Shown here piece after piece: positions 7,586 through 19,232 of a stretch of DNA of 64,000 nt. The translations under genes were made by a program, and so were the position numbers. The notes under the pieces are model-generated. The model was not told the DNA's origin, did not search any database, and saw only the letters and a program-made list of their open reading frames with translations. The DNA is taken from the IMG/VR virus record IMGVR_UViG_3300047322_001237, positions 1-64,000 of that record; one strand, 5' to 3'. Position 1 is the stretch's first letter, and the number at the start of each line of letters is the position of its first letter.

Positions 7586-7837
7586 TTAGCGTCGTGCGGC
7601 GCATTGTTCACGGGTGACCCGCAGGATACCGCGAATGTATGCGAGTCCGATGTAGATCGACCAGACGGGCCAGAGGATAGCCATGGCCATCGAGGAGATC
7701 AGGAAGACGATGTCGTTGTTGGCGGTTCGTCGGATGATGCGAACGACTTCAGGGTTACTGCGAAGCCAGAACAGACCGAGGACGAGATAGAAGGGGAGGA
7801 AGAAGCTGAGGCCTGCGAAAATCGCAACAGTATTCAT
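7586..7837 (-). CDS. Small membrane protein
   Basis: 83 aa with two hydrophobic segments, ATGA overlap with the upstream gene. Confidence 0.65.
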   Translation of the reverse strand: MNTVAIFAGLSFFLPFYLVLGLFWLRSNPEVVRIIRRTANNDIVFLISSMAMAILWPVWSIYIGLAYIRGILRVTREQCAARR

Positions 7838-8241
7838 GGTTGTTCTTTTACGTGGGGTGGAATAGCTGAACGGAGCTCGCCAGCGTAAGTGACCTCGAAC
7901 TTGGCGTCCTTGAGGTAGTCGGTGAGCAAGTCCCTGAACGGATGACGGTGGCAGAACGCGCCGTCTCGGCAGTAGCAGGCGACAGCAATCTTGTCAGAGA
8001 GCGTCTTGAGCTTTTCCCACTCGTCCGGGAACTTGCGGCGTGACTGACGCATGCGCATCAGGTAACGCTCGAGATACTCCTCTTCAGAGAGCTCTCCGCG
8101 CTTGTAGGCCATCACGTTATCGAAGAGCGGAGCGAAGGCGGGATTGCCGGACTTGGCAGTGACGTCGAGGAGGGTGATGCCCAACTCACGCACCAGTCGC
8201 CACTTGGAGAGCTGCACGGTGTAGAGCGTGACTTTCTTCAT
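7834..8241 (-). CDS. DUF488-like protein
   Basis: Start ATG 8241 (ATGA overlap). Contains LDVTAKSG..FAP, EEEYLERY and ACYC....FCHRH, resembling the DUF488 C...CHR motif. Confidence 0.6.
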   Translation of the reverse strand: MKKVTLYTVQLSKWRLVRELGITLLDVTAKSGNPAFAPLFDNVMAYKRGELSEEEYLERYLMRMRQSRRKFPDEWEKLKTLSDKIAVACYCRDGAFCHRHPFRDLLTDYLKDAKFEVTYAGELRSAIPPHVKEQP

Positions 8242-8441
8242 GATGCTTGATTGCACTTAGCCGCGGGATCCTTGCTGTGGCGTGAGGGGTAGGGACCATA
8301 CTTGCAGTCCTCGCAGGCAATGACGGTGTTGTAGCCGCACTCGTATTCATCGCCATCGAGAGCGAAGGAGCGACGGTATCCCTTGCACTTCGAGTTCTTC
8401 TTCGGCTGCGGTTCAAAGAGCTGGATCACTGCTGAGGTCAT
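8238..8441 (-). CDS. Small Cys-rich hypothetical protein
   Basis: 67 aa with five Cys including CEDC. Translationally coupled to the downstream gene. Confidence 0.55.
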   Translation of the reverse strand: MTSAVIQLFEPQPKKNSKCKGYRRSFALDGDEYECGYNTVIACEDCKYGPYPSRHSKDPAAKCNQAS

Positions 8442-9163: not shown

Positions 9164-9697
9164 TTACGACTTGTGAAAGTCCCTCCGCGTGCTGGTGCCG
9201 TTTGAATTGGGGTTGTATCGATTGGAGTACGGACGCGCACCTTCCCGAGGCGATCGTTCGCTCCGATAGGGTCTATTGCCGTTGTCGCGCTTGTAAAACT
9301 CCGAACTGCGGATGTGTTGCGTGGATGGCACAGCCACTTCAATGGGAGAGCTGGTGGAGATCCGAATCTTCTTCAGCCCAGGCGAGGAAATCAGGCGGCC
9401 CTTGACGGTAGCTGCGCCTTGCTCGAACGCCTTCTGCACGGAACCCTTGCCAAGCAATACCGTGTACTTGCCTTCCTGCTTGAAGAAGGCGATTTCCCCG
9501 TATTGCAGCTCCGGTGCAGCAGGCGCGTAGCATACACCGAAATTCTGCACGTCGGCGCCTGTCGGATCGAGTGTGTTCAGATCTTCGGGTTTGACTTCGA
9601 TTACGGGAGCCTGACGCATCAGGCCAACCAGCGACTTCACGAGATACTCTTCGCCTTTGAATTGCAGGCGAATCTCATCGCGTTTTTCCATGTTCAT
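9164..9697 (-). CDS. Hypothetical protein with basic disordered C-terminus
   Basis: Likely start ATG 9697 or 9691 rather than GTG 9778. C-terminus is rich in R/S/N/P. Confidence 0.65.
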   Translation of the reverse strand: MNMEKRDEIRLQFKGEEYLVKSLVGLMRQAPVIEVKPEDLNTLDPTGADVQNFGVCYAPAAPELQYGEIAFFKQEGKYTVLLGKGSVQKAFEQGAATVKGRLISSPGLKKIRISTSSPIEVAVPSTQHIRSSEFYKRDNGNRPYRSERSPREGARPYSNRYNPNSNGTSTRRDFHKS

Positions 9698-9838
9698 AGA
9701 GCTATTTGGTTTCCGGTTTAGTTCTAGCCATAACAAGGGGTTAACCGCGTAAAAATTCCCCAGGTTCCTTGAGAACACTGAGGTACCAGGTTCAAGTTAG
9801 TGATATGTGTTTGTTTTCGGTTTCAATCAGGTAAGCAG

Positions 9839-9878
9839 ACGGCATAAGCGCCAGCCGGTTTCCCGGCTGGCGTATGCC
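9839..9878. terminator. CATA-hairpin-TATG element
   Basis: acggcataag-cgccagccgg-tttc-ccggctggcg-tatgcc, just downstream of the protease/microprotein operon. Confidence 0.7.
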
Positions 9879-9884
9879 AGTCGA

Positions 9885-9974
9885 TTAGTCTTTCCAATTG
9901 TTGCCACAGTGCATGCAACACCACCAACCGTCCTCATGCTCCGCGAGCATGAAGCTTCCGCATCGGGGACACAT
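9885..9974 (-). CDS. 29-aa zinc-ribbon microprotein
   Basis: Hand-translated as MCPRCGSFMLAEHEDGWWCCMHCGNNWKD*. AAGGA RBS overlaps the protease stop codon. Fills the gap between that stop and a terminator. Confidence 0.7.
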   Translation of the reverse strand: MCPRCGSFMLAEHEDGWWCCMHCGNNWKD

Positions 9975-9985
9975 CGGTTAGTTCC

Positions 9986-10744
9986 TTACCAGTTCAGGTA
10001 GGCAGGCTTGCTACCGTTGTCCGACGCCCATCCGAGCGAGGTGAACAGCTCCTGAACGTTCAGGCGAACGGATTCCTGAGCGATGCCCTGTGCGGACGCA
10101 CGGTGCGCGCCTTCCAGGTGGCGGCGGGAGAACATCGATTCGGCGATCTCCTCGAGGGCGGGCGACTTGAACTTGTTGGCGATCGCAATGCCCGGTTCGT
10201 TCACGTAGTCCCACGTCACGATGTTCTTCAGCACGCGGTGCGTCGTGCGGCCGACCTGATCGTCACGCGTGAAGGCCCGGATCGAGAAGCAGACGTTCTC
10301 GTTCTTGTTCTCGAGCGAGCGACGCAGCGCGTCACCCTTCGGGCCGCTCGGGCAAACTTTACCGACGATCGCGATGCACTTGCGACCCTGCGGATCACGG
10401 ATGCGATCGAAGTCCAGCGTGATCTCCCTGATGTGGTGGGAGACGTCGCCTTCGTAGATCGACAGGATGCGTTGAGCGTACGAATCGTAGCTCTGGCCCG
10501 GCACCATCTTGGGATGGCCGTATTCACCGCGCAACGCGCCGTTGGCCACGCGTCGCATGAGCTGGCTGGAGCTCGTGAAAAGCTCCTTGGCGGGCTCGTA
10601 CGGATAGAACTGGTCGGCGGAGTTGTACACGTCCAGTCCGCCCAGCACCACCTCGTAGTAGCCGTCTTCGTCCGGTCGGAGATCACCGGCCTTGTTCGTG
10701 CCGTTGAGCGCCGTGAAACCGAAACGGATGTAGTTGTTACCCAT
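9986..10744 (-). CDS. Prohead (head maturation) protease, phiKZ gp175-like
   Basis: GEYGHP (His), FSIRA (Ser) and TWDYVNEPG motifs, plus synteny with the virion RNAP block. Confidence 0.9.
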   Translation of the reverse strand: MGNNYIRFGFTALNGTNKAGDLRPDEDGYYEVVLGGLDVYNSADQFYPYEPAKELFTSSSQLMRRVANGALRGEYGHPKMVPGQSYDSYAQRILSIYEGDVSHHIREITLDFDRIRDPQGRKCIAIVGKVCPSGPKGDALRRSLENKNENVCFSIRAFTRDDQVGRTTHRVLKNIVTWDYVNEPGIAIANKFKSPALEEIAESMFSRRHLEGAHRASAQGIAQESVRLNVQELFTSLGWASDNGSKPAYLNW

Positions 10745-13242: not shown

Positions 13243-16200
13243 TTACGACCGGTAGAGTTCCACGGCCTTCTGGCCAATCACATCGAGCAAGGTCGTTGTG
13301 GTCGCGATGAGTTCCGGAGACGACACGATCCGGTCTGCAACAGACTTCGCGCCAAAGATCGCATCGACCTTCAGTCCGGATTCCGTTCTCAGCTCACGCT
13401 CCATCACCTGACCGAACACCGTTTTCAACTGGTTGCCGAACACGCCCTTGTCACCCACGCCAGCCGGGACGTCCGCAGTGATGTAGATCTGAATCGCTGC
13501 GGTGTCCAACTGAAGCGGAGTGCCTTCGACGCGGAAGCTTTCATCCACGCTGCCGGTGTAGCCCTTCTTGCCCACGGAGCGCGAACGCTTGATCATGGCC
13601 GCATCGGATGTGGCCGCGAGTTTCTGGAGCGAAGGCGACATGTCCTCCAGCTCCCCGTGGTAAAAGACCTCAATGCGCTCAACGATGCCCGCGGATTTCG
13701 CCTTGGGTGTTTGCTCGCTCAGCACACGCAGTGTGTCAAGAGACTCCTCGTCGAACAGACGGTTGCCCGCTGTCACGGCGTCCTCGATGACGCATAAAAT
13801 ATCCTCGGAGCCCAGAACGGCGCCTGGCTTTGTGAGCTTGTGGATCTCCTGATCGAAGTTGACGACGATGGTTCGCACCTTCGTCATCTGCGTGGTCAGT
13901 AGTTCCGAGACCTCTCTCGAGATCGCCGAAGAGTCTTCCAGCGTCACCATCGCTTCCATGAACACGGTCTTCACCGTGATCCCGGCCTTCCACACGACGC
14001 TTTCCGGATTCAGGACATCCGGCTCGAAGAAGCCGTCGTTGTAGGAGAGCAGGGTACCGGGTTTGAACGCTTGACCGGCCTTCATGTTGGTGTTGACCTG
14101 ATGCGGTACCACGAGACCTGCTGCATTGCCGTAGCGACGTCCCAGCTCAATGCCCTGGATCTCGCCGTCTTCGTACTGCACTTGCATGCCGTGCTCGTTG
14201 ACAGAAAGCACCTTGCCGCCTTTCTTCGCCGTGACTGCAAACAGGTCGCCCGCGCGATGAGCAATGACGCCCTCGTAACCCGTGCGAAGAGAGGCCTGCT
14301 TGTAACCACGACACGCGATGCCGTGACTCTGCTGAATGCCGATGAAGTTCACCCGCTTCGGATCGTCACGGTCGGCAGCCGGCGACAGCAGCGCTGACGT
14401 CGAGAGCAAAGCCGTCGCACCCGTTTTCTTCACGTCGTAGGGGCGGGAGACACCGCGCAACGAAGTGAACTGCGGATCCGCGCTGGTGTACGTGTTGATC
14501 GCCACGTCCGAGGAGTCGACGGTCGATTCCGAGATCGTCCCCATGTCGTTCTGGTGATAAGCACGGGTCGACTTCGTCATACTGCGCGAGCCTCGGCCAC
14601 CCACACCCGAGTACGTCACGGCTTCCATCTCTTTCAGGTTCTGGATCGGATTGATTTCCGACACCTGGATCTTTGCGGGATCCTGGGTGATGTTTTTCCA
14701 GACCTGGAACGGATGCAGGTCGATCGGCAGGCGCGACTTGCCAGCCCGGCCGTTGTGCACGCGAATCGAACGCACGATTTCCGAGTACACAGCACCCGCC
14801 ATCCGCTCGTAGCCCTTGATCCGCATGTAACGCGAATCGAGTTCGTCCGGATGGTGGTCCGTGAGCAGCATCTCGCAAGCCTTGAGCAACAGGCTCTGAT
14901 AATCCGTCGGCTCCTTCATGTCCATGAGCAACTCGCGCGTGATCGGATCGATGAAAAGCTGATACTGCAGATCGATCTCGCGCAGATAGCGCTGTGATGC
15001 GCCACCCGACTCCAGGACGTTCAGGTACACGCCACGCCGATCGAACTCGTGCACGTTGTACGTGCGCAGGCTCCGGTGATACTCATTGAAGCCGGCGAGC
15101 ACCATCGAGGCGAATGTCTTGTCGCGCGGGAACACCAGCGTCTCATCCGAGAACACCAGGCTGTATTCGTTCGGTTGAAGGTTGACGCGCTGTCCAGCCG
15201 GCACCCGGCGCGGCTCGACCTTGAGCATCTTCATCAGACGCTCTAGTCCCATTTCGTAGCCAAGCACCACGCCCAACGGAATTGTCCGGCCCAACACCTT
15301 CACTTCCGCGAAGTCGACCGGAGCCTTGGCCGGTTCCAGCTGAAGCATCTCCTCGATCGAAGGCAGCACCTGGGGCAAGCGCTTCTCGCCGCGGGTCGCT
15401 TCATACAGCGCGCCGTTGCGGTCCATCAACAGGAACGTGTTCGGCTTCTTGAGCGACTTGCCGCAGACTTCCATGCCGTGCTCAGCCATCAGCTTCAACG
15501 TGTCTTCGCCGTATAGTGCTACGCGCTTCGTGTGGTCGAAGTTCCATTCGAACCCGGCCAGCGTGAAGCCACGGAAGGACATCGCCAAGATGCTGTACAG
15601 ACGCGGACACGGGAACAGGTTGTCGAACACGTCTGCCATGTGCATGTTCGCGAGCAGGCTGTTGCCTTTCTCCAGACCGATGGCCCGAATGGAGTTACAC
15701 AGCCACGTGCCGTAGTCGTTAACGCGCTTCGGCGAACGGGAGACGAACACCTTGCCGTAGTAGCTGGTGAGTGCCACAGTCTCCGGGTCGATCTTGCGGA
15801 TCGGTAGGTCGCCGCGCTGCTTACGAACACGGTACTTCACGCCATTGCTGGTGAACGTGCCATCTTCAGCCAGCGTCGGCAGACGGAAGCGGAACGTCGA
15901 TTGCGCTCCATCGACGGGCGTAACACGAACTGTGTAGATCTTGTATTCGCCCATGACGTCATCCACGTCCTCGACCTCGTAGCCGGTGACGCAGAGACCA
16001 GCCTGCTGAAGGTTGAGCACCATGCTGGCGACATCCTTCTGCATGACCTTCTTGATGTAGTGCGAGTCGAAGACCATCAACGACGACTTGAGCATCGTCT
16101 TGTCCGGTACCGTCGCAACGTCGGGAAGTGCGGGCGATTCAGGAATCTGCACATCTTCCTGAGCGACCTGCGAGAAGTCACCCAGCGTCGACTTCCCGTC

Positions 16201-17601
16201 CGGAGCCACGATCTTCTTGTACGCCTGAGACAGTGCCTGATAGCGACGGTGTTCACCCGCGCTCAACATGCCCTGTTCCGCGAGGCGATCGCAGATCTTC
16301 ATCACAGCGCCTTCGGGACTGAGCGTCACGGGTGCTTCGACGGTCACTTCCTTGCGCGTTTCTTCGTCCGGATCGCTCAGATTCGCGATGTGCTCCAGCT
16401 GGTCCAGGTCCGCGTCGATCTGCTTCTCGAGCTCTGCGTCACGATGGATGTCAGTACCGCGCTCATCCGGTGCGTCTTCTTCGTGCTTGAGTGAGGCGAC
16501 CACGCGCATTGTCTTGCTGCGGTTCGCCAACTCTTCATCGTCGAGATCATCGTCCAGCTGCTTCGGTGCCTGGAAGTAGGTCGGAGCCTCGGTCGGTTGC
16601 TGTACCGTCTTGGTGATTTCGCCCGTGGTCGGGTTGACCGAGTCCACCACGTTGGTCGGTTCCTGCGGGGTCTCGCCCGATGCGGGTACTGCGCTGTCGC
16701 TCTCGGCCATGACTTCAGGCGCGGCTGCCGTACGGACTTCCATCAGCGACATGAGCATGCGCAGGAAGAAACGCTGCAGTCGAATGGGCGGGTAGCCGTG
16801 CTGGTTCGCTTCGGGGTTGACTTCCAGTTCGGTCGGCGTCGCAATCCGCCAGCCGTTGAGCGTGGCGAGGTTCACCACGAACCAGCGGCCGCTCTCTTCG
16901 AACAGGAGGTTGACGCGACCGATGTGCGCATCGCTCACGTGGGAGAGCATCGACGACTTGCGGTTCTCACCGAGCCACTTCCAGATTTCGAGAATCATCA
17001 GCGCTTCGTGCGAATTGAAACGCTTGATGAGACGCTGGTTGATGCCGCCGGCTTCGCCGACCTTCAGATCGGCCAGACACGGCAGGATCTTGGGCAGGGT
17101 GATCGGGATGAACTGATTCCGGTTGGAGCGCGCGGCGATGTCACCGACCTGGCTCCAGAGCGTCTCCGCGACGTTGTGCCACTGGTAATAGTTGGCGAAC
17201 AGCGATCGCGGGTAGCGATACATCCGCCACAGGAACGCGTAGTTCATCACGGCGAGCGTGTTGTCGTCCCGTGTGCCAGTCTCGAAATTCACGAGCTTCT
17301 TGTAGCGGCGATGCTTCTGAAACCACTGCGAGGACAGCAACGGCGTCGACGTCGGTATCAGACGCGGGTTGCCCTGATTCGCAGCCTGCTGGAAAACGTG
17401 AGAGACGACGATCGGTCGGGTGATTCCCCGGAACTCGATCTGGTTCGAATCCGGACCACTGTCGAGCGGGCCGCCGCCCATGAAGTGAAACAGGCTGCGC
17501 TTGGGCAGCGCCATTTGATCCATACCCGGCAGGGGCGGCTGGATCAGCTGTGCGGTGCGGCGCACGCCGTATCGTCGATAGAAGTATTCGTACAGGAACA
17601 T
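13243..17601 (-). CDS. rpoB: Virion RNA polymerase beta subunit, large part (phiKZ gp178-like)
   Basis: 1452 aa with beta-like motifs: RAYHQNDMGTISESTVDSSDVAIN, DRDDPKRVNFIGIQQSH, EDSSAIS and GVGDKGVFGNQLKTV. Confidence 0.92.
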   Translation of the reverse strand: MFLYEYFYRRYGVRRTAQLIQPPLPGMDQMALPKRSLFHFMGGGPLDSGPDSNQIEFRGITRPIVVSHVFQQAANQGNPRLIPTSTPLLSSQWFQKHRRYKKLVNFETGTRDDNTLAVMNYAFLWRMYRYPRSLFANYYQWHNVAETLWSQVGDIAARSNRNQFIPITLPKILPCLADLKVGEAGGINQRLIKRFNSHEALMILEIWKWLGENRKSSMLSHVSDAHIGRVNLLFEESGRWFVVNLATLNGWRIATPTELEVNPEANQHGYPPIRLQRFFLRMLMSLMEVRTAAAPEVMAESDSAVPASGETPQEPTNVVDSVNPTTGEITKTVQQPTEAPTYFQAPKQLDDDLDDEELANRSKTMRVVASLKHEEDAPDERGTDIHRDAELEKQIDADLDQLEHIANLSDPDEETRKEVTVEAPVTLSPEGAVMKICDRLAEQGMLSAGEHRRYQALSQAYKKIVAPDGKSTLGDFSQVAQEDVQIPESPALPDVATVPDKTMLKSSLMVFDSHYIKKVMQKDVASMVLNLQQAGLCVTGYEVEDVDDVMGEYKIYTVRVTPVDGAQSTFRFRLPTLAEDGTFTSNGVKYRVRKQRGDLPIRKIDPETVALTSYYGKVFVSRSPKRVNDYGTWLCNSIRAIGLEKGNSLLANMHMADVFDNLFPCPRLYSILAMSFRGFTLAGFEWNFDHTKRVALYGEDTLKLMAEHGMEVCGKSLKKPNTFLLMDRNGALYEATRGEKRLPQVLPSIEEMLQLEPAKAPVDFAEVKVLGRTIPLGVVLGYEMGLERLMKMLKVEPRRVPAGQRVNLQPNEYSLVFSDETLVFPRDKTFASMVLAGFNEYHRSLRTYNVHEFDRRGVYLNVLESGGASQRYLREIDLQYQLFIDPITRELLMDMKEPTDYQSLLLKACEMLLTDHHPDELDSRYMRIKGYERMAGAVYSEIVRSIRVHNGRAGKSRLPIDLHPFQVWKNITQDPAKIQVSEINPIQNLKEMEAVTYSGVGGRGSRSMTKSTRAYHQNDMGTISESTVDSSDVAINTYTSADPQFTSLRGVSRPYDVKKTGATALLSTSALLSPAADRDDPKRVNFIGIQQSHGIACRGYKQASLRTGYEGVIAHRAGDLFAVTAKKGGKVLSVNEHGMQVQYEDGEIQGIELGRRYGNAAGLVVPHQVNTNMKAGQAFKPGTLLSYNDGFFEPDVLNPESVVWKAGITVKTVFMEAMVTLEDSSAISREVSELLTTQMTKVRTIVVNFDQEIHKLTKPGAVLGSEDILCVIEDAVTAGNRLFDEESLDTLRVLSEQTPKAKSAGIVERIEVFYHGELEDMSPSLQKLAATSDAAMIKRSRSVGKKGYTGSVDESFRVEGTPLQLDTAAIQIYITADVPAGVGDKGVFGNQLKTVFGQVMERELRTESGLKVDAIFGAKSVADRIVSSPELIATTTTLLDVIGQKAVELYRS

Positions 17602-17606
17602 CTTGT

Positions 17607-19232
17607 TTAATCCCCGGTCAGGTTGTGCAGCACCAGGTTCACTGTGGAGACTGCTACGCTTGCGAGTGCTCGTCCGTCCGTGCCCACGTAGGCGCGCCGG
17701 CTGGCGAGGAAGTCGTCAACTTCTTGAATGCTTTCGTCGGTGTAGGTGACGTTGCCCGAGGACGTGTCGCCGTCGAAGTCAGCGCCCATCAGACCCAGCT
17801 TCGAGCTGTGCGGAACCAGCGAGTTGATGAACGCGCCACCGTCGACAGGGAACTCGTAGGCGATATAGTCGTCACCAATCGGGTTCCAGTCCGGTCCCAG
17901 TTCCTTGCGACGCTCCGAGAGCACCGTCGTGCGAACGTGTGCCTTACTCGGTACGATCGAGCCGATACCCGTGATGGGGTAGCGGGTGACGAAGAGCGGC
18001 AGACGATCCATCTCCCGATAGGTCGAGAGGTAGAGCAACTGGCAGAACGTAATGGGCGAGACGTCTTTCTTGTCGCGACCCTCGGGCAACTCGTCGATGC
18101 CGTTCATCAATCGGAAAGTCATGTCGGGGCCGCGGTAGATGAGGCCCAAGTACTTGCCGTCGATCTCGATCGGTTTGTGCCGCAGATCTTCTTCGCCAAA
18201 CGCCGTTAGGATCTTCTCGATCCCTTCGCTCGTCATCCAGCGATCGAAGTAATCCATCGACAGCTGCGTTGGCTCAGTCTGCAGCGTCTTCTTGTTCACG
18301 AGCTTTGCAGCGATGCCCGCACCCGGGAAGACCTTCTGGAGAAAGCCGTTGCGGATGTGGTAGACGGCGACCGGTCGCGCGGCCTTGAGCATCTGGTACA
18401 GGCCGATCACGGTGTTGTTGAAGCCCACGTTGCCGGGCGCGCCGAGATAGGCAGCGGAAGTGTCCATCGCCGTGATCACGTTTCGCGTACCGTCAAACAC
18501 GCGGCGACTTGCCCACTTGCCCATCAGCAGCTTGCGCTTGCCTTCCACCATGCTCTCGAGCAGGTCATAGAGCTTGTTGAAGGTCATCTGCAGGCTGTAG
18601 CGAACCGTGTTGATGATCTCGGGGTTCGTGCGCAGCGCCGAATCGGTCACGCTGTTGGACTTGGCGATGAGCTCACGGTAGATCGTGTTGATCTCGTCCT
18701 CGCGCACCCGGCCATCCGGGCCGATTTCCAGATCGCGCATGCCCGCAGGCATCACCACGATCTTCGAGGTCATGCCTTTTTCCTTGAACTTCTCGATGAG
18801 CAGGATGTTCTGCTCACGCGTGTCGCTCTTCGTCTTCTCGAAGACGATGTTCTTCCAGTTCGACACAAAGAACTGAAAGCCCGTCTTTCCGTTCACCGGA
18901 TCGCTACGCTCGAAGTCGCGGATCTCCGGATTCCATACGGCGTACTCCGCGCCCGAGATGATGTCGCCGTATAGACGCTTCAGGCTCACGAGCGCACGGA
19001 AGATCACCGGGTGAAAGATCGGTACGCGGATATCGATGAAGGAAAAGCGTTGCGAGCGCTTCTCGTCGCCGACCTTGCCGAAGATGCTCACGGAGAACAG
19101 GCCGTCCTCAGCGAAGTTGTTGCTGTTGCCGTCGAAGAAGGCGAGTGAGGTCACAGGCTTCAGACCCTGCAACTTGGCTGGCGTCAAGTCCAGCAAGCTC
19201 AGATTGAAAGGAATCGCAGAACGCTGAGGCAT
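17607..19232 (-). CDS. rpoC: Virion RNA polymerase beta-prime subunit with catalytic motif (phiKZ gp180-like)
   Basis: Catalytic ADFDGD motif, plus DGLFSVSIFG, VVMPAGMRD, GKRKLLMGKWASRRV and TRYP. Confidence 0.93.
   Translation of the reverse strand: MPQRSAIPFNLSLLDLTPAKLQGLKPVTSLAFFDGNSNNFAEDGLFSVSIFGKVGDEKRSQRFSFIDIRVPIFHPVIFRALVSLKRLYGDIISGAEYAVWNPEIRDFERSDPVNGKTGFQFFVSNWKNIVFEKTKSDTREQNILLIEKFKEKGMTSKIVVMPAGMRDLEIGPDGRVREDEINTIYRELIAKSNSVTDSALRTNPEIINTVRYSLQMTFNKLYDLLESMVEGKRKLLMGKWASRRVFDGTRNVITAMDTSAAYLGAPGNVGFNNTVIGLYQMLKAARPVAVYHIRNGFLQKVFPGAGIAAKLVNKKTLQTEPTQLSMDYFDRWMTSEGIEKILTAFGEEDLRHKPIEIDGKYLGLIYRGPDMTFRLMNGIDELPEGRDKKDVSPITFCQLLYLSTYREMDRLPLFVTRYPITGIGSIVPSKAHVRTTVLSERRKELGPDWNPIGDDYIAYEFPVDGGAFINSLVPHSSKLGLMGADFDGDTSSGNVTYTDESIQEVDDFLASRRAYVGTDGRALASVAVSTVNLVLHNLTGD

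What the first reader, a model, noticed from the sequence alone, without database searches (positions are those of the whole stretch)
9885..9974. Unannotated 29-aa zinc-ribbon microprotein resembling eS31/S27ae, behind the prohead protease
Seen: MCPRCGSFMLAEHEDGWWCCMHCGNNWKD. It has an AAGGA RBS overlapping the protease stop and is followed by a hairpin terminator. It is below the ORF-track cutoff. The CPxCG...CxxCG spacing is a zinc ribbon. From memory, the string CPRCG..FM.AEH.D.W.C..CG...WK is close to archaeal ribosomal protein S27ae (CPRCG..FMAEHKDR..CGKCG). It also fits RNAP/TFIIB-type ribbons. Inference: a stand-alone ribbon at the end of the virion RNAP-protease operon could be a small vRNAP accessory subunit or a ribosome-binding factor.
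Basis: partly seen in the sequence, partly recalled or inferred. Interest (0 to 1): 0.7.

Follow-up and report, generated by a model that had tools for sequence, protein, structure and literature searches.

The report
Borrowed 29-residue zinc-ribbon phage microgene
The 29-codon reading frame is a real gene for a tiny zinc-binding protein that a giant (phiKZ-like) phage of Caballeronia appears to have picked up from ordinary temperate phages of the same host. It is an optional accessory gene, not a ribosomal-protein relative or a polymerase subunit.

Summary
The ORF is real: window 9885-9974, minus strand, 29 aa. AAGGA lies 8 nt before the ATG and overlaps the protease stop, and a strong hairpin follows.

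It is a bona fide gene. Alleles within the jumbo-phage clade differ by 7 synonymous and 3 non-synonymous changes (dN/dS about 0.1). Homologues 55-83% identical to one another (66-76% to the window protein) occur in at least eight temperate-phage or prophage contexts, mostly in Caballeronia. There the gene is always translationally coupled and sits just upstream of xis/int. AlphaFold2 gives a confident three-stranded zinc ribbon (pLDDT 93.6).

It is lineage-specific in the jumbo phage:
- A relative with 96% protease identity lacks it, as do relatives at 82, 74 and 73%.
- FLC9 and RP12 also lack it; all of these run from the protease stop straight to the conserved hairpin.
- One isolate copy (C. 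arationis) has a private TGA at codon 4.

The eS31 resemblance exists for the single sequence (PDB best hit, E 0.001) but fades with the family profile (E 0.07-0.7) and is below Pfam thresholds. The family is acidic, so it reads as generic ribbon likeness.

The vRNAP-subunit and ribosome-factor ideas are not supported. The most likely role is a horizontally acquired, host-directed protein-binding microprotein with an unknown target. Interest is modest.

The parts
9885..9974 (-). 29-codon microgene (stop included) encoding a 4-Cys zinc ribbon. The ligands are C2, C5, C20 and C23; C19 is not conserved.
   Evidence: Searches give the sequence. One search gives dN/dS of about 0.1. Searches give the homologues and the alignment. 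One search gives the AF2 model at pLDDT 93.6.
9983..9987 (-). Shine-Dalgarno AAGGA, overlapping the protease stop codon (9986-9988) and 8 nt before the ATG.
   Evidence: One search gives the sequence. One search gives the SD core frequency: 41% of long ORFs against 7% background.
9986..10744 (-). Prohead (head-maturation) protease, Peptidase_S80. It is the upstream gene of the same transcription unit.
   Evidence: E 5.9e-76.
9841..9878 (-). Conserved GC-rich hairpin ending the protease unit. It is present directly after the protease stop in all relatives. The microgene lies between the stop and this hairpin.
   Evidence: -38.3 kcal/mol, z -7.55. Compensatory stem changes are shown.
9840..9848 (-). 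CTTATGCCG motif at the 3' foot of the hairpin. It contains TATG (9846-9843), the phiKZ late-promoter consensus with the start at G. It is the putative start of the downstream gene's transcript.
   Evidence: TTATGCCG occurs 34 times against about 7.6 expected, mostly right after strong hairpins. PMC4666361.
9164..9697 (-). Next gene (177 aa, function unknown), syntenic in all relatives. The JGI start is the ATG at 9697.
13243..19232 (-). Two phage multisubunit RNAP beta-type subunit genes (13243-17601 and 17607-19232) heading the same gene block.
   Evidence: phrog_3148 with E reported as 0; phrog_2986 with E 7.5e-203.

Best explanation
The ORF is a functional, horizontally acquired accessory microgene.

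How it is expressed: it sits between the protease stop codon and the pre-existing hairpin that ends the vRNAP-protease unit. It is therefore transcribed as the last cistron of that middle/late unit and translated from its own AAGGA site.

What it makes: a 29-residue Zn(Cys)4 zinc ribbon with two CxxCG knuckles and a three-stranded sheet. The family is acidic and carries invariant or nearly invariant exposed residues (R4, S7, G16, W17, N25, W27). The most likely action is stoichiometric binding to a protein rather than to nucleic acid.

Likely target: the same gene family sits in temperate phages of the same host genus, at the xis/int-proximal end of their early-left operons. The jumbo phage and those phages share the host but, as far as seen, not this operon. 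The target is therefore most likely a Caballeronia host protein (host take-over, anti-defence or inter-phage competition), not the phage's own polymerase, protease or virion.

Shown: the gene is real, under purifying selection, optional, and shared with temperate phages; the fold is predicted with confidence.
Inferred: zinc binding, protein binding, host target, and timing of expression.
For: Coding and selection:
- Window versus the L004-type allele shows 6 synonymous and 3 non-synonymous changes over S=12.5 and N=74.5 sites (dN/dS about 0.1; binomial P 5e-4). Counting the X25 allele gives 7 of 10 synonymous (P 1e-4).
- All four ligand Cys are invariant, and two ligand Cys codons (C20 unchanged; C19 and C23) carry synonymous changes.

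Family:
- Homologues occur in Caballeronia genomes G173, G727 (C. telluris SAL26279.1) and G722.
- They also occur in five IMG/VR contigs of 33-48 kb and in P0121-P0125.
- In almost all temperate contexts the start and stop overlap or abut neighbouring genes (TAATG, TGATG, ATGA).

Context:
- Lambda-type integrase, YqaJ and RecT are present.
- The gene lies 0-3 genes upstream of xis/int.

Optional in the jumbo phage:
- It is absent at 96, 82, 74 and 73% protease identity.
- It is absent in FLC9, RP12, FLC1-1B and the metagenomic relatives.

Fold and charge:
- AF2 pLDDT 93.6.
- Foldseek TM 0.7-0.8 to many zinc ribbons.
- Acidic charge.
Against: - No expression data cover the ORF. The one RNA-library contig stops at 9990.
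- One isolate copy has a nonsense codon at position 4 and a close relative lacks the gene, so it is dispensable at least under some conditions.
- An antisense frame with coincident wobble positions (9898-9981, plus strand) shows the same 6:3 substitution pattern. However, it lacks an SD and uses TTG in the window.
- No partner was identified, and all fold and profile matches are generic.
- The direction of transfer is inferred from distribution only.
Confidence: 0.55

Rival explanations
1. Small accessory subunit or cofactor of the virion RNA polymerase, or of the prohead protease or virion, encoded with them.
For: It is the last cistron of the block that holds the RNAP beta-type subunits, structural proteins and the protease. 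Zinc ribbons are common RNAP-binding modules. Weak profile likeness to the TFIIB, RPB9 and RpoM-2 ribbons was seen.
Against: It is absent from a relative with 96% identical protease and from every other relative with the same operon. Homologues occur in temperate phages in whose loci no vRNAP or S80 protease was seen. A nonsense allele persists in an isolate.
Confidence: 0.05
2. Ribosome-binding factor that mimics or derives from archaeal/eukaryotic eS31 (S27ae).
For: The best single-sequence PDB hit is S27ae, E 0.0011, with shared CPRCG, AEH.D.W and WK. IMG auto-annotation of P0121 is 'ribosomal protein S27AE'.
Against: Ribosomal_S27 scores 17.0 bits, below its 22.3 cut-off and not above the generic ribbons. 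The family profile lowers eS31 to E 0.07-0.7. The G173 homologue does not hit Ribosomal_S27 at E 0.01 or better. The best structural matches are eL43, RPA12 and TFIIB ribbons, all at E above 0.3. The family is acidic, and basic charge would be expected of an rRNA-binding ribbon. From general knowledge, bacterial ribosomes have no eS31.
Confidence: 0.05
3. Modulator of host RNA polymerase or another transcription component. This would be analogous to small zinc proteins of the lambdoid exo-xis region, such as the TraR-like Orf73.
For: It sits in the exo-xis-equivalent position in temperate phages. Lambda's exo-xis region encodes the Zn-binding Ea8.5 and the RNAP-binding C4-zinc Orf73 (PMC8614690). 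The top weak profile hits are transcription-type ribbons. The beta1-beta2 loop is acidic.
Against: All likenesses are sub-threshold and generic. The protein lacks the helices of TraR/DksA. phiKZ-type infection is independent of host RNAP (PMC4666361 abstract), so the benefit to the jumbo phage is unclear.
Confidence: 0.12
4. Neutral passenger: a recently inserted fragment that is decaying and has no function in the jumbo phage.
For: There is a private TGA at codon 4 in the C. arationis assembly. A close relative lacks it, and its spacer shows a possible remnant (GCGAAAGCTTC against GCGGAAGCTTC in the ORF; P about 0.04).
Against: Three intact alleles were found in independent metagenomes with 7:3 synonymous to non-synonymous changes. 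The SD and start are retained, and the L004-type allele is intact in the environment.
Confidence: 0.1
5. The real gene is the antisense small ORF (9898-9981, plus strand), and the zinc-ribbon frame is its shadow.
For: The same 6:3 substitution pattern holds in that frame. It is open in both the window and L004.
Against: It has no SD, and it starts with TTG in the window but with an ATG further upstream in L004. It runs against all neighbouring genes. The sense frame has a canonical Cys4 motif, hits ribbon profiles, and is start/stop-coupled to same-strand neighbours in eight other contexts.
Confidence: 0.02

Closest known systems
Archaeal/eukaryotic ribosomal protein eS31 (S27ae), Pfam PF01599
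   Same: It has a Cys4 zinc ribbon with similar knuckle spacing. The window sequence shares CPRCG, AEH.D.W and WK with Thermococcus-type S27ae.
   Different: It scores below the Pfam cut-off, and the similarity fades at family level. It is 29 aa against roughly 50-75 aa for the matched S27ae/eS31 chains, acidic rather than basic, and found in bacterial viruses, whose hosts have no eS31.
Generic stand-alone zinc ribbons: TFIIB-type PF08271, Zn_ribbon_3 PF13248, RPB9/TFS, eL43, PhnA, and haloarchaeal small CPxCG zinc-finger proteins
   Same: It shares the fold class, with two CxxC(G) knuckles and a three-stranded sheet, and the size class of microproteins.
   Different: No family threshold is reached. 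It has its own conserved signature, roughly MCxRCGSxMLxEHxxGWWxCMxCGNxW[KR][DE], and it is confined so far to Caballeronia-associated phages.
Small zinc-binding proteins of the lambdoid exo-xis region (lambda Ea8.5, TraR-like Orf73)
   Same: In temperate phages the family occupies the same kind of position, in the early-left operon next to xis/int. Its members are small, zinc-binding and accessory.
   Different: There is no sequence or fold relation. Ea8.5 is a homeodomain/zinc-finger hybrid and Orf73 is a helical TraR-like protein. The microprotein here is a bare ribbon.
Phage 'morons' / accessory genes
   Same: It shows presence/absence polymorphism among near-identical phages and was inserted between two conserved elements. 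The likely donor pool is other phages of the same host.
   Different: A classical moron brings its own promoter and terminator. This one uses the host operon's transcript and the pre-existing hairpin.

Membership tests
Ribosomal_S27 / eS31 (PF01599) | Profile score at or above the Pfam gathering threshold (22.3 bits) | tested here: not met
   17.0 bits, E 0.0054. It is outranked by Zn_Ribbon_TF and Zn_ribbon_3. The G173 homologue gives no hit at E 0.01 or better.
Ribosomal_S27 / eS31 (PF01599) | The similarity is a property of the whole family, not of one sequence | tested here: not met
   The family profile against PDB places eS31 at E 0.067-0.69, behind LIM, the RNAP-B ribbon, rubredoxin and RpoM-2.
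Ribosomal_S27 / eS31 (PF01599) | Basic, rRNA-binding protein of the small subunit | tested here: not met
   Net charge is -0.4 to -3.5 for the 28-31-aa members. Ribosome binding itself is not testable here.
Zinc ribbon fold (generic) | Two conserved CxxC knuckles supplying four ligands | tested here: met
   C2, C5, C20 and C23 are invariant in 12 sequences, and G6 and G24 are invariant.
Zinc ribbon fold (generic) | Three-stranded antiparallel sheet between and after the knuckles | tested here: met
   AF2 pLDDT 93.6 with strands at 10-13, 17-20 and 26-28. Foldseek gives TMq 0.7-0.8 and rmsd 1.3-1.6 A to eL43, RPA12, TFIIB and PhnA ribbons.
Zinc ribbon fold (generic) | Binds one zinc ion | not testable with these tools
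   The complex-prediction job with Zn was not folded, so it gives no evidence either way.
TFIIB-type zinc ribbon (PF08271) | Profile score at or above the gathering threshold (29 bits) | tested here: not met
   18.1 bits for the window protein and 19.1 bits for the G173 homologue.
phiKZ-type virion RNAP subunit set | Conserved with the vRNAP genes across phiKZ-like phages | tested here: not met
   It is absent next to the protease in relatives at 96, 82, 74 and 73% protease identity, in FLC9, RP12 and FLC1-1B, and in six metagenomic loci. tblastn found no hit in 50,697 phage records.
Protein-coding gene (as opposed to a chance ORF) | Purifying selection in frame, and homologues in independent contexts | tested here: met
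   dN/dS is about 0.1, P 1e-4 to 1e-3. At least eight independent temperate-phage contexts have coupled starts and stops.
Protein-coding gene (as opposed to a chance ORF) | Direct evidence of translation | not testable with these tools
   No RNA or ribosome data cover the ORF. The RNA-library contig ends at 9990.
Moron / accessory gene | Present or absent among otherwise near-identical genomes | tested here: met
   Variant C (L018; X2, X3 and X5 contigs) replaces 167 nt with 84 nt and runs from the protease stop through 27 nt to the hairpin.
Moron / accessory gene | Own promoter and terminator | tested here: inconclusive
   Only 11 nt separate it from the protease stop, and no sigma-70-like site was found. 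It uses the pre-existing hairpin. Phage-RNAP promoters inside the protease gene cannot be excluded.

The most novel reading that the evidence does not exclude
A previously undescribed family of 28-31-residue zinc-ribbon microproteins circulates among Caballeronia phages of unrelated types: lambdoid temperate phages and a phiKZ-like jumbo phage. It would act as a compact inhibitor or modulator of one conserved host protein, such as a defence, division or proteolysis component. That would make it a portable 'host-handle' usable both early in temperate development and late in jumbo-phage infection.
Probability: 0.35. Interest if true: 0.5.

Novelty: new member of a known kind. Interest (0 to 1): 0.3.

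Why it matters
- Genes at the 90-nt limit are systematically missed or misnamed. Here the JGI caller skipped the gene, and IMG named a homologue 'ribosomal protein S27AE'.
- The case shows with natural alleles that such a microgene is real and selected.
- It also shows that the gene moves between temperate and jumbo phages that share a host.
- It gives a clean natural experiment for finding the target: intact, nonsense and absent variants in otherwise near-identical phages.
- It removes a tempting but unsupported claim that a phage encodes a relative of an archaeal ribosomal protein.

Tried and rejected
The protease was used instead to reach graded relatives.
- tblastn of the peptide and of the G173 homologue against INPHARED phages gave only chance hits (E 0.5 or worse) or none.
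- PHROGs gave nothing below E 0.07.
- A sample of 400 Burkholderiales genomes gave no further hit.
- The exhaustive profile search found only five small members plus locally similar eukaryotic RanBP2-type finger repeats. I regard the latter as convergent.
- ESM Atlas returned only generic small ribbons.
- Complex prediction with Zn was not folded, so it is not evidence.
- The upstream partners in two prophages are unrelated to each other, so there is no conserved two-gene module.
- Frameshift or readthrough fusion to the protease was rejected because of an in-frame TAA two codons before the ATG.
- TGA recoding was rejected because 77 of 230 long ORFs end in TGA.
- The test of whether variant C's spacer is a deletion remnant of the ORF was borderline (P about 0.04; others not significant). 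Gain versus loss on that one branch is therefore left open.

Full report
**1.

The ORF lies on the minus strand at 9885-9974 and encodes 29 residues with CPRCG at positions 2-6 and C-M-H-C-G at 20-24. The upstream gene, 9986-10744(-), is a Peptidase_S80 prohead protease (E 6e-76). Further upstream lie a virion structural protein (phrog_2926), phrog_3841, and two RNAP beta-type subunit genes.

AAGGA (9987-9983) overlaps the protease TAA and sits 8 nt before the ATG. An SD core in that position is found before 41% of long ORFs of this genome against 7% at random.

Eleven nucleotides after the stop begins a strong hairpin (9841-9878; -38.3 kcal/mol, z -7.55). It is followed by CUUAUGCCG rather than a U tract.

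A TAA two codons before the ATG, in the ORF's own frame, excludes a frameshift or readthrough fusion to the protease. The genome is a 278,988-bp IMG/VR record with terminal repeats, assembled from a rhizosphere metagenome. The JGI gene caller did not call this ORF.

**2. It is a real gene**

*(a) Alleles within the jumbo-phage clade.*
- Two other JGI metagenome contigs (L015, L016) carry the ORF with only D15G.
- A soil-metagenome contig (X25) adds two synonymous changes.
- The copy in the Caballeronia arationis LMG 29324 assembly (L004 = L012; protease 98% identical) differs at 10 positions in the 29 codons: 6 synonymous, 3 non-synonymous and one CGA>TGA at codon 4. The stop codon also differs, TAA>TAG.
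- A rhizosphere contig (X2 record 5) carries all of that copy's other changes but not the nonsense one, so the stop is private to the isolate.
- With S=12.5 and N=74.5 sites, dN/dS is about 0.1. The excess of synonymous changes has binomial P 5e-4, or 1e-4 with the X25 allele.
- Caveat: the antisense frame with coincident wobble positions shows the same 6:3 pattern. It has no SD and starts with TTG in the window.

*(b) Homologues elsewhere.*
- A scan of 301 Burkholderiaceae genomes found one clear homologue (G173, E 2e-10, 66% identical).
- All 69 genomes of that genus, which is the genus of C. arationis, gave two more: G727 and G722. G727 is the C. telluris protein SAL26279.1, annotated 'hypothetical'.
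- An exhaustive profile search of 1.84 billion representatives found five small members.
- A degenerate DNA pattern found five IMG/VR contigs of 33-48 kb.
- In almost all of these the gene is 28-31 codons long, and its start and stop overlap or abut same-strand neighbours (TAATG, TGATG, ATGA).
- In the 12-sequence alignment, C2, C5, G6, G16, W17, C20, C23 and G24 are invariant. M1, R4, S7, N25 and W27 are nearly so. C19 of the window protein is V, L or I in others, so it is not a ligand.

*(c) Predicted fold.* AlphaFold2 on this alignment gives pLDDT 93.6 with three strands, a classical zinc ribbon.

**3. Where the family lives**

In G173 the gene lies between a lambda-type integrase (Arm-binding domain) and YqaJ/RecT recombination genes. 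In the other contexts it is 0-3 genes upstream of an excisionase-like gene and an integrase. It is therefore a gene of the xis/int-proximal end of the early-left operon of temperate phages. This is the position that in lambda holds the little-understood exo-xis genes, among them the zinc-binding Ea8.5 and the TraR-like Orf73 (PMC8614690).

**4. In the jumbo phage it is a lineage-specific insertion**

Relatives were ordered by protease identity:
- 96% (L018, which is the 'variant C' contigs in three metagenomes);
- 82% (L019);
- 74% (L020);
- 73% (L021, Paraburkholderia sp. BCC1886);
- 52% (FLC9) and 46% (RP12, FLC1-1B).

All of these go from the protease stop through 15-40 nt to the hairpin and the YTTATGCC motif, with no room for the ORF. 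No CxxC...CxxC small ORF occurs within 2.5-3 kb of the protease in any distant relative.

The nearest temperate-phage copy, from C. telluris, is 80% identical in DNA over the ORF only; the flanks are unrelated. The simplest history is capture of the bare cistron from a temperate phage of the same host. Whether variant C never had it or lost it is open. An 11-mer in variant C's spacer matches the ORF at 10 of 11 positions (P about 0.04).

**5. The eS31 lead**

phmmer against PDB does put archaeal S27ae first (6tmf_Z, E 0.0011), with RpoM-2 second (0.0019). Four results argue against a real relation:
- Pfam places Ribosomal_S27 (17.0 bits; cut-off 22.3) below the TFIIB ribbon and Zn_ribbon_3.
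- The G173 homologue hits the TFIIB and RPB9 ribbons only.
- The family profile moves eS31 to E 0.07-0.7, behind LIM, the archaeal RNAP-B ribbon, rubredoxins and RpoM-2.
- Foldseek ranks eL43, RPA12, Brf1/TFIIB and PhnA ribbons, all at E above 0.3.

IMG names family members inconsistently, as S27AE and as UPF0148. All 28-31-aa members are acidic, with net charge -0.4 to -3.5.

**6. Most likely mechanism**

The following points are shown:
- it is a selected microgene;
- it is optional;
- it is shared between phage types whose evident common factor is the host genus;
- a ribbon fold is predicted with confidence;
- it is placed as the last cistron before a conserved hairpin.

The following points are inferred:
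- It binds one zinc through C2, C5, C20 and C23.
- With almost no buried core, the conserved Trp, Met and Leu residues, plus R4, E12, H13 and N25, would form an exposed binding face.
- Being acidic, it binds a protein rather than nucleic acid.
- The target is a Caballeronia protein rather than vRNAP, protease or virion.

In phiKZ the vRNAP genes are middle genes and late promoters are TATG with the start at G (PMC4666361). By analogy, the microprotein would be made in the middle/late period. The downstream gene would start at G 9843, inside the CTTATGCCG motif.

My confidence is about 0.85 that it is a real translated gene, about 0.8 that it is an acquired accessory gene, and about 0.5 that it is a host-directed protein binder. 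No specific target can be named.

**7. Rivals**
- vRNAP, protease or virion cofactor: 0.05.
- eS31-like ribosome factor: 0.05.
- Host-RNAP or transcription modulator in the manner of exo-xis zinc proteins: 0.12.
- Decaying neutral passenger: 0.10.
- Antisense ORF: 0.02.

**8. Novelty and interest**

The fold and the kind of gene are ordinary: a stand-alone zinc-ribbon phage microprotein that is an accessory gene. The family itself is undescribed and narrowly distributed. The case is a tidy example of microgene exchange between temperate and jumbo phages, and of an automatic misannotation. Interest is modest (0.3).

Noticed in passing
window 9840-9878, and about 30 further sites across G000 (e.g. 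6038+, 28661-, 38663-, 45229-, 49809+, 59678+; G000 69411-/69443+): A genome-wide punctuation element: a strong GC-rich hairpin immediately followed by YTTATGCCG. TTATGCCG occurs 34 times against about 7.6 expected, while TTATG overall is depleted. A GGCATAA arm often sits upstream, so the element reads the same on both strands. The same hairpin plus TATGCC follows the protease in relatives down to 46% identity (FLC9, RP12). It contains the phiKZ late-promoter consensus TATG, so it is possibly a combined terminator and late-promoter junction.
   Followed up: partly
window 9780-9847 (minus strand), against L004: About 70 nt downstream of the hairpin, the leader of the next gene, are 100% identical between the window and the C. 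arationis copy. The microgene just upstream differs at 11% of positions. This is an unusually conserved non-coding stretch.
   Followed up: no
L012/L004 (NZ_FCOG02000011.1, 143,740 bp): A large contig of a closely related phiKZ-like jumbo phage sits in the genome assembly of the isolate Caballeronia arationis LMG 29324. This points to Caballeronia as the host and to a carrier or pseudolysogenic state in that culture. Related S80 proteases are also annotated in Paraburkholderia assemblies.
   Followed up: partly
L037:1308-1496(-) and L038:8500-8832(+): In two prophage contexts the gene immediately after the microgene encodes a small protein with a ClpX N-terminal zinc-binding-domain-like motif (CxFCGK...CxxC). 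It could be a decoy for ClpX adaptors. An upstream lipoprotein-like gene with an LAGC lipobox is also shared by these two contexts.
   Followed up: no
G000 254950-255084 (-): Another possibly real small Cys-containing ORF (44 aa, ATG, AGGAG upstream, CxxC...CxxC) outside the window.
   Followed up: no
window 7834-8256 (-) and 8238-8441 (-): A DUF488-N3a-like protein (E 8e-8) and an overlapping 67-aa Cys-rich ORF of unknown function lie about 1.5 kb downstream of the finding.
   Followed up: no
P0121 (IMG contig of 45,969 bp; L042): IMG's automatic name for this family member is 'ribosomal protein S27AE', while other members are named 'UPF0148 Zn finger'. This is a propagating misannotation of a phage microprotein.
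   Followed up: yes
window 9164-9778 (-): The mechanical ORF starts at GTG 9778. The JGI call and the alignment with relatives place the real start at ATG 9697 (177 aa). The intergenic region is therefore about 290 nt, not about 200.
   Followed up: yes
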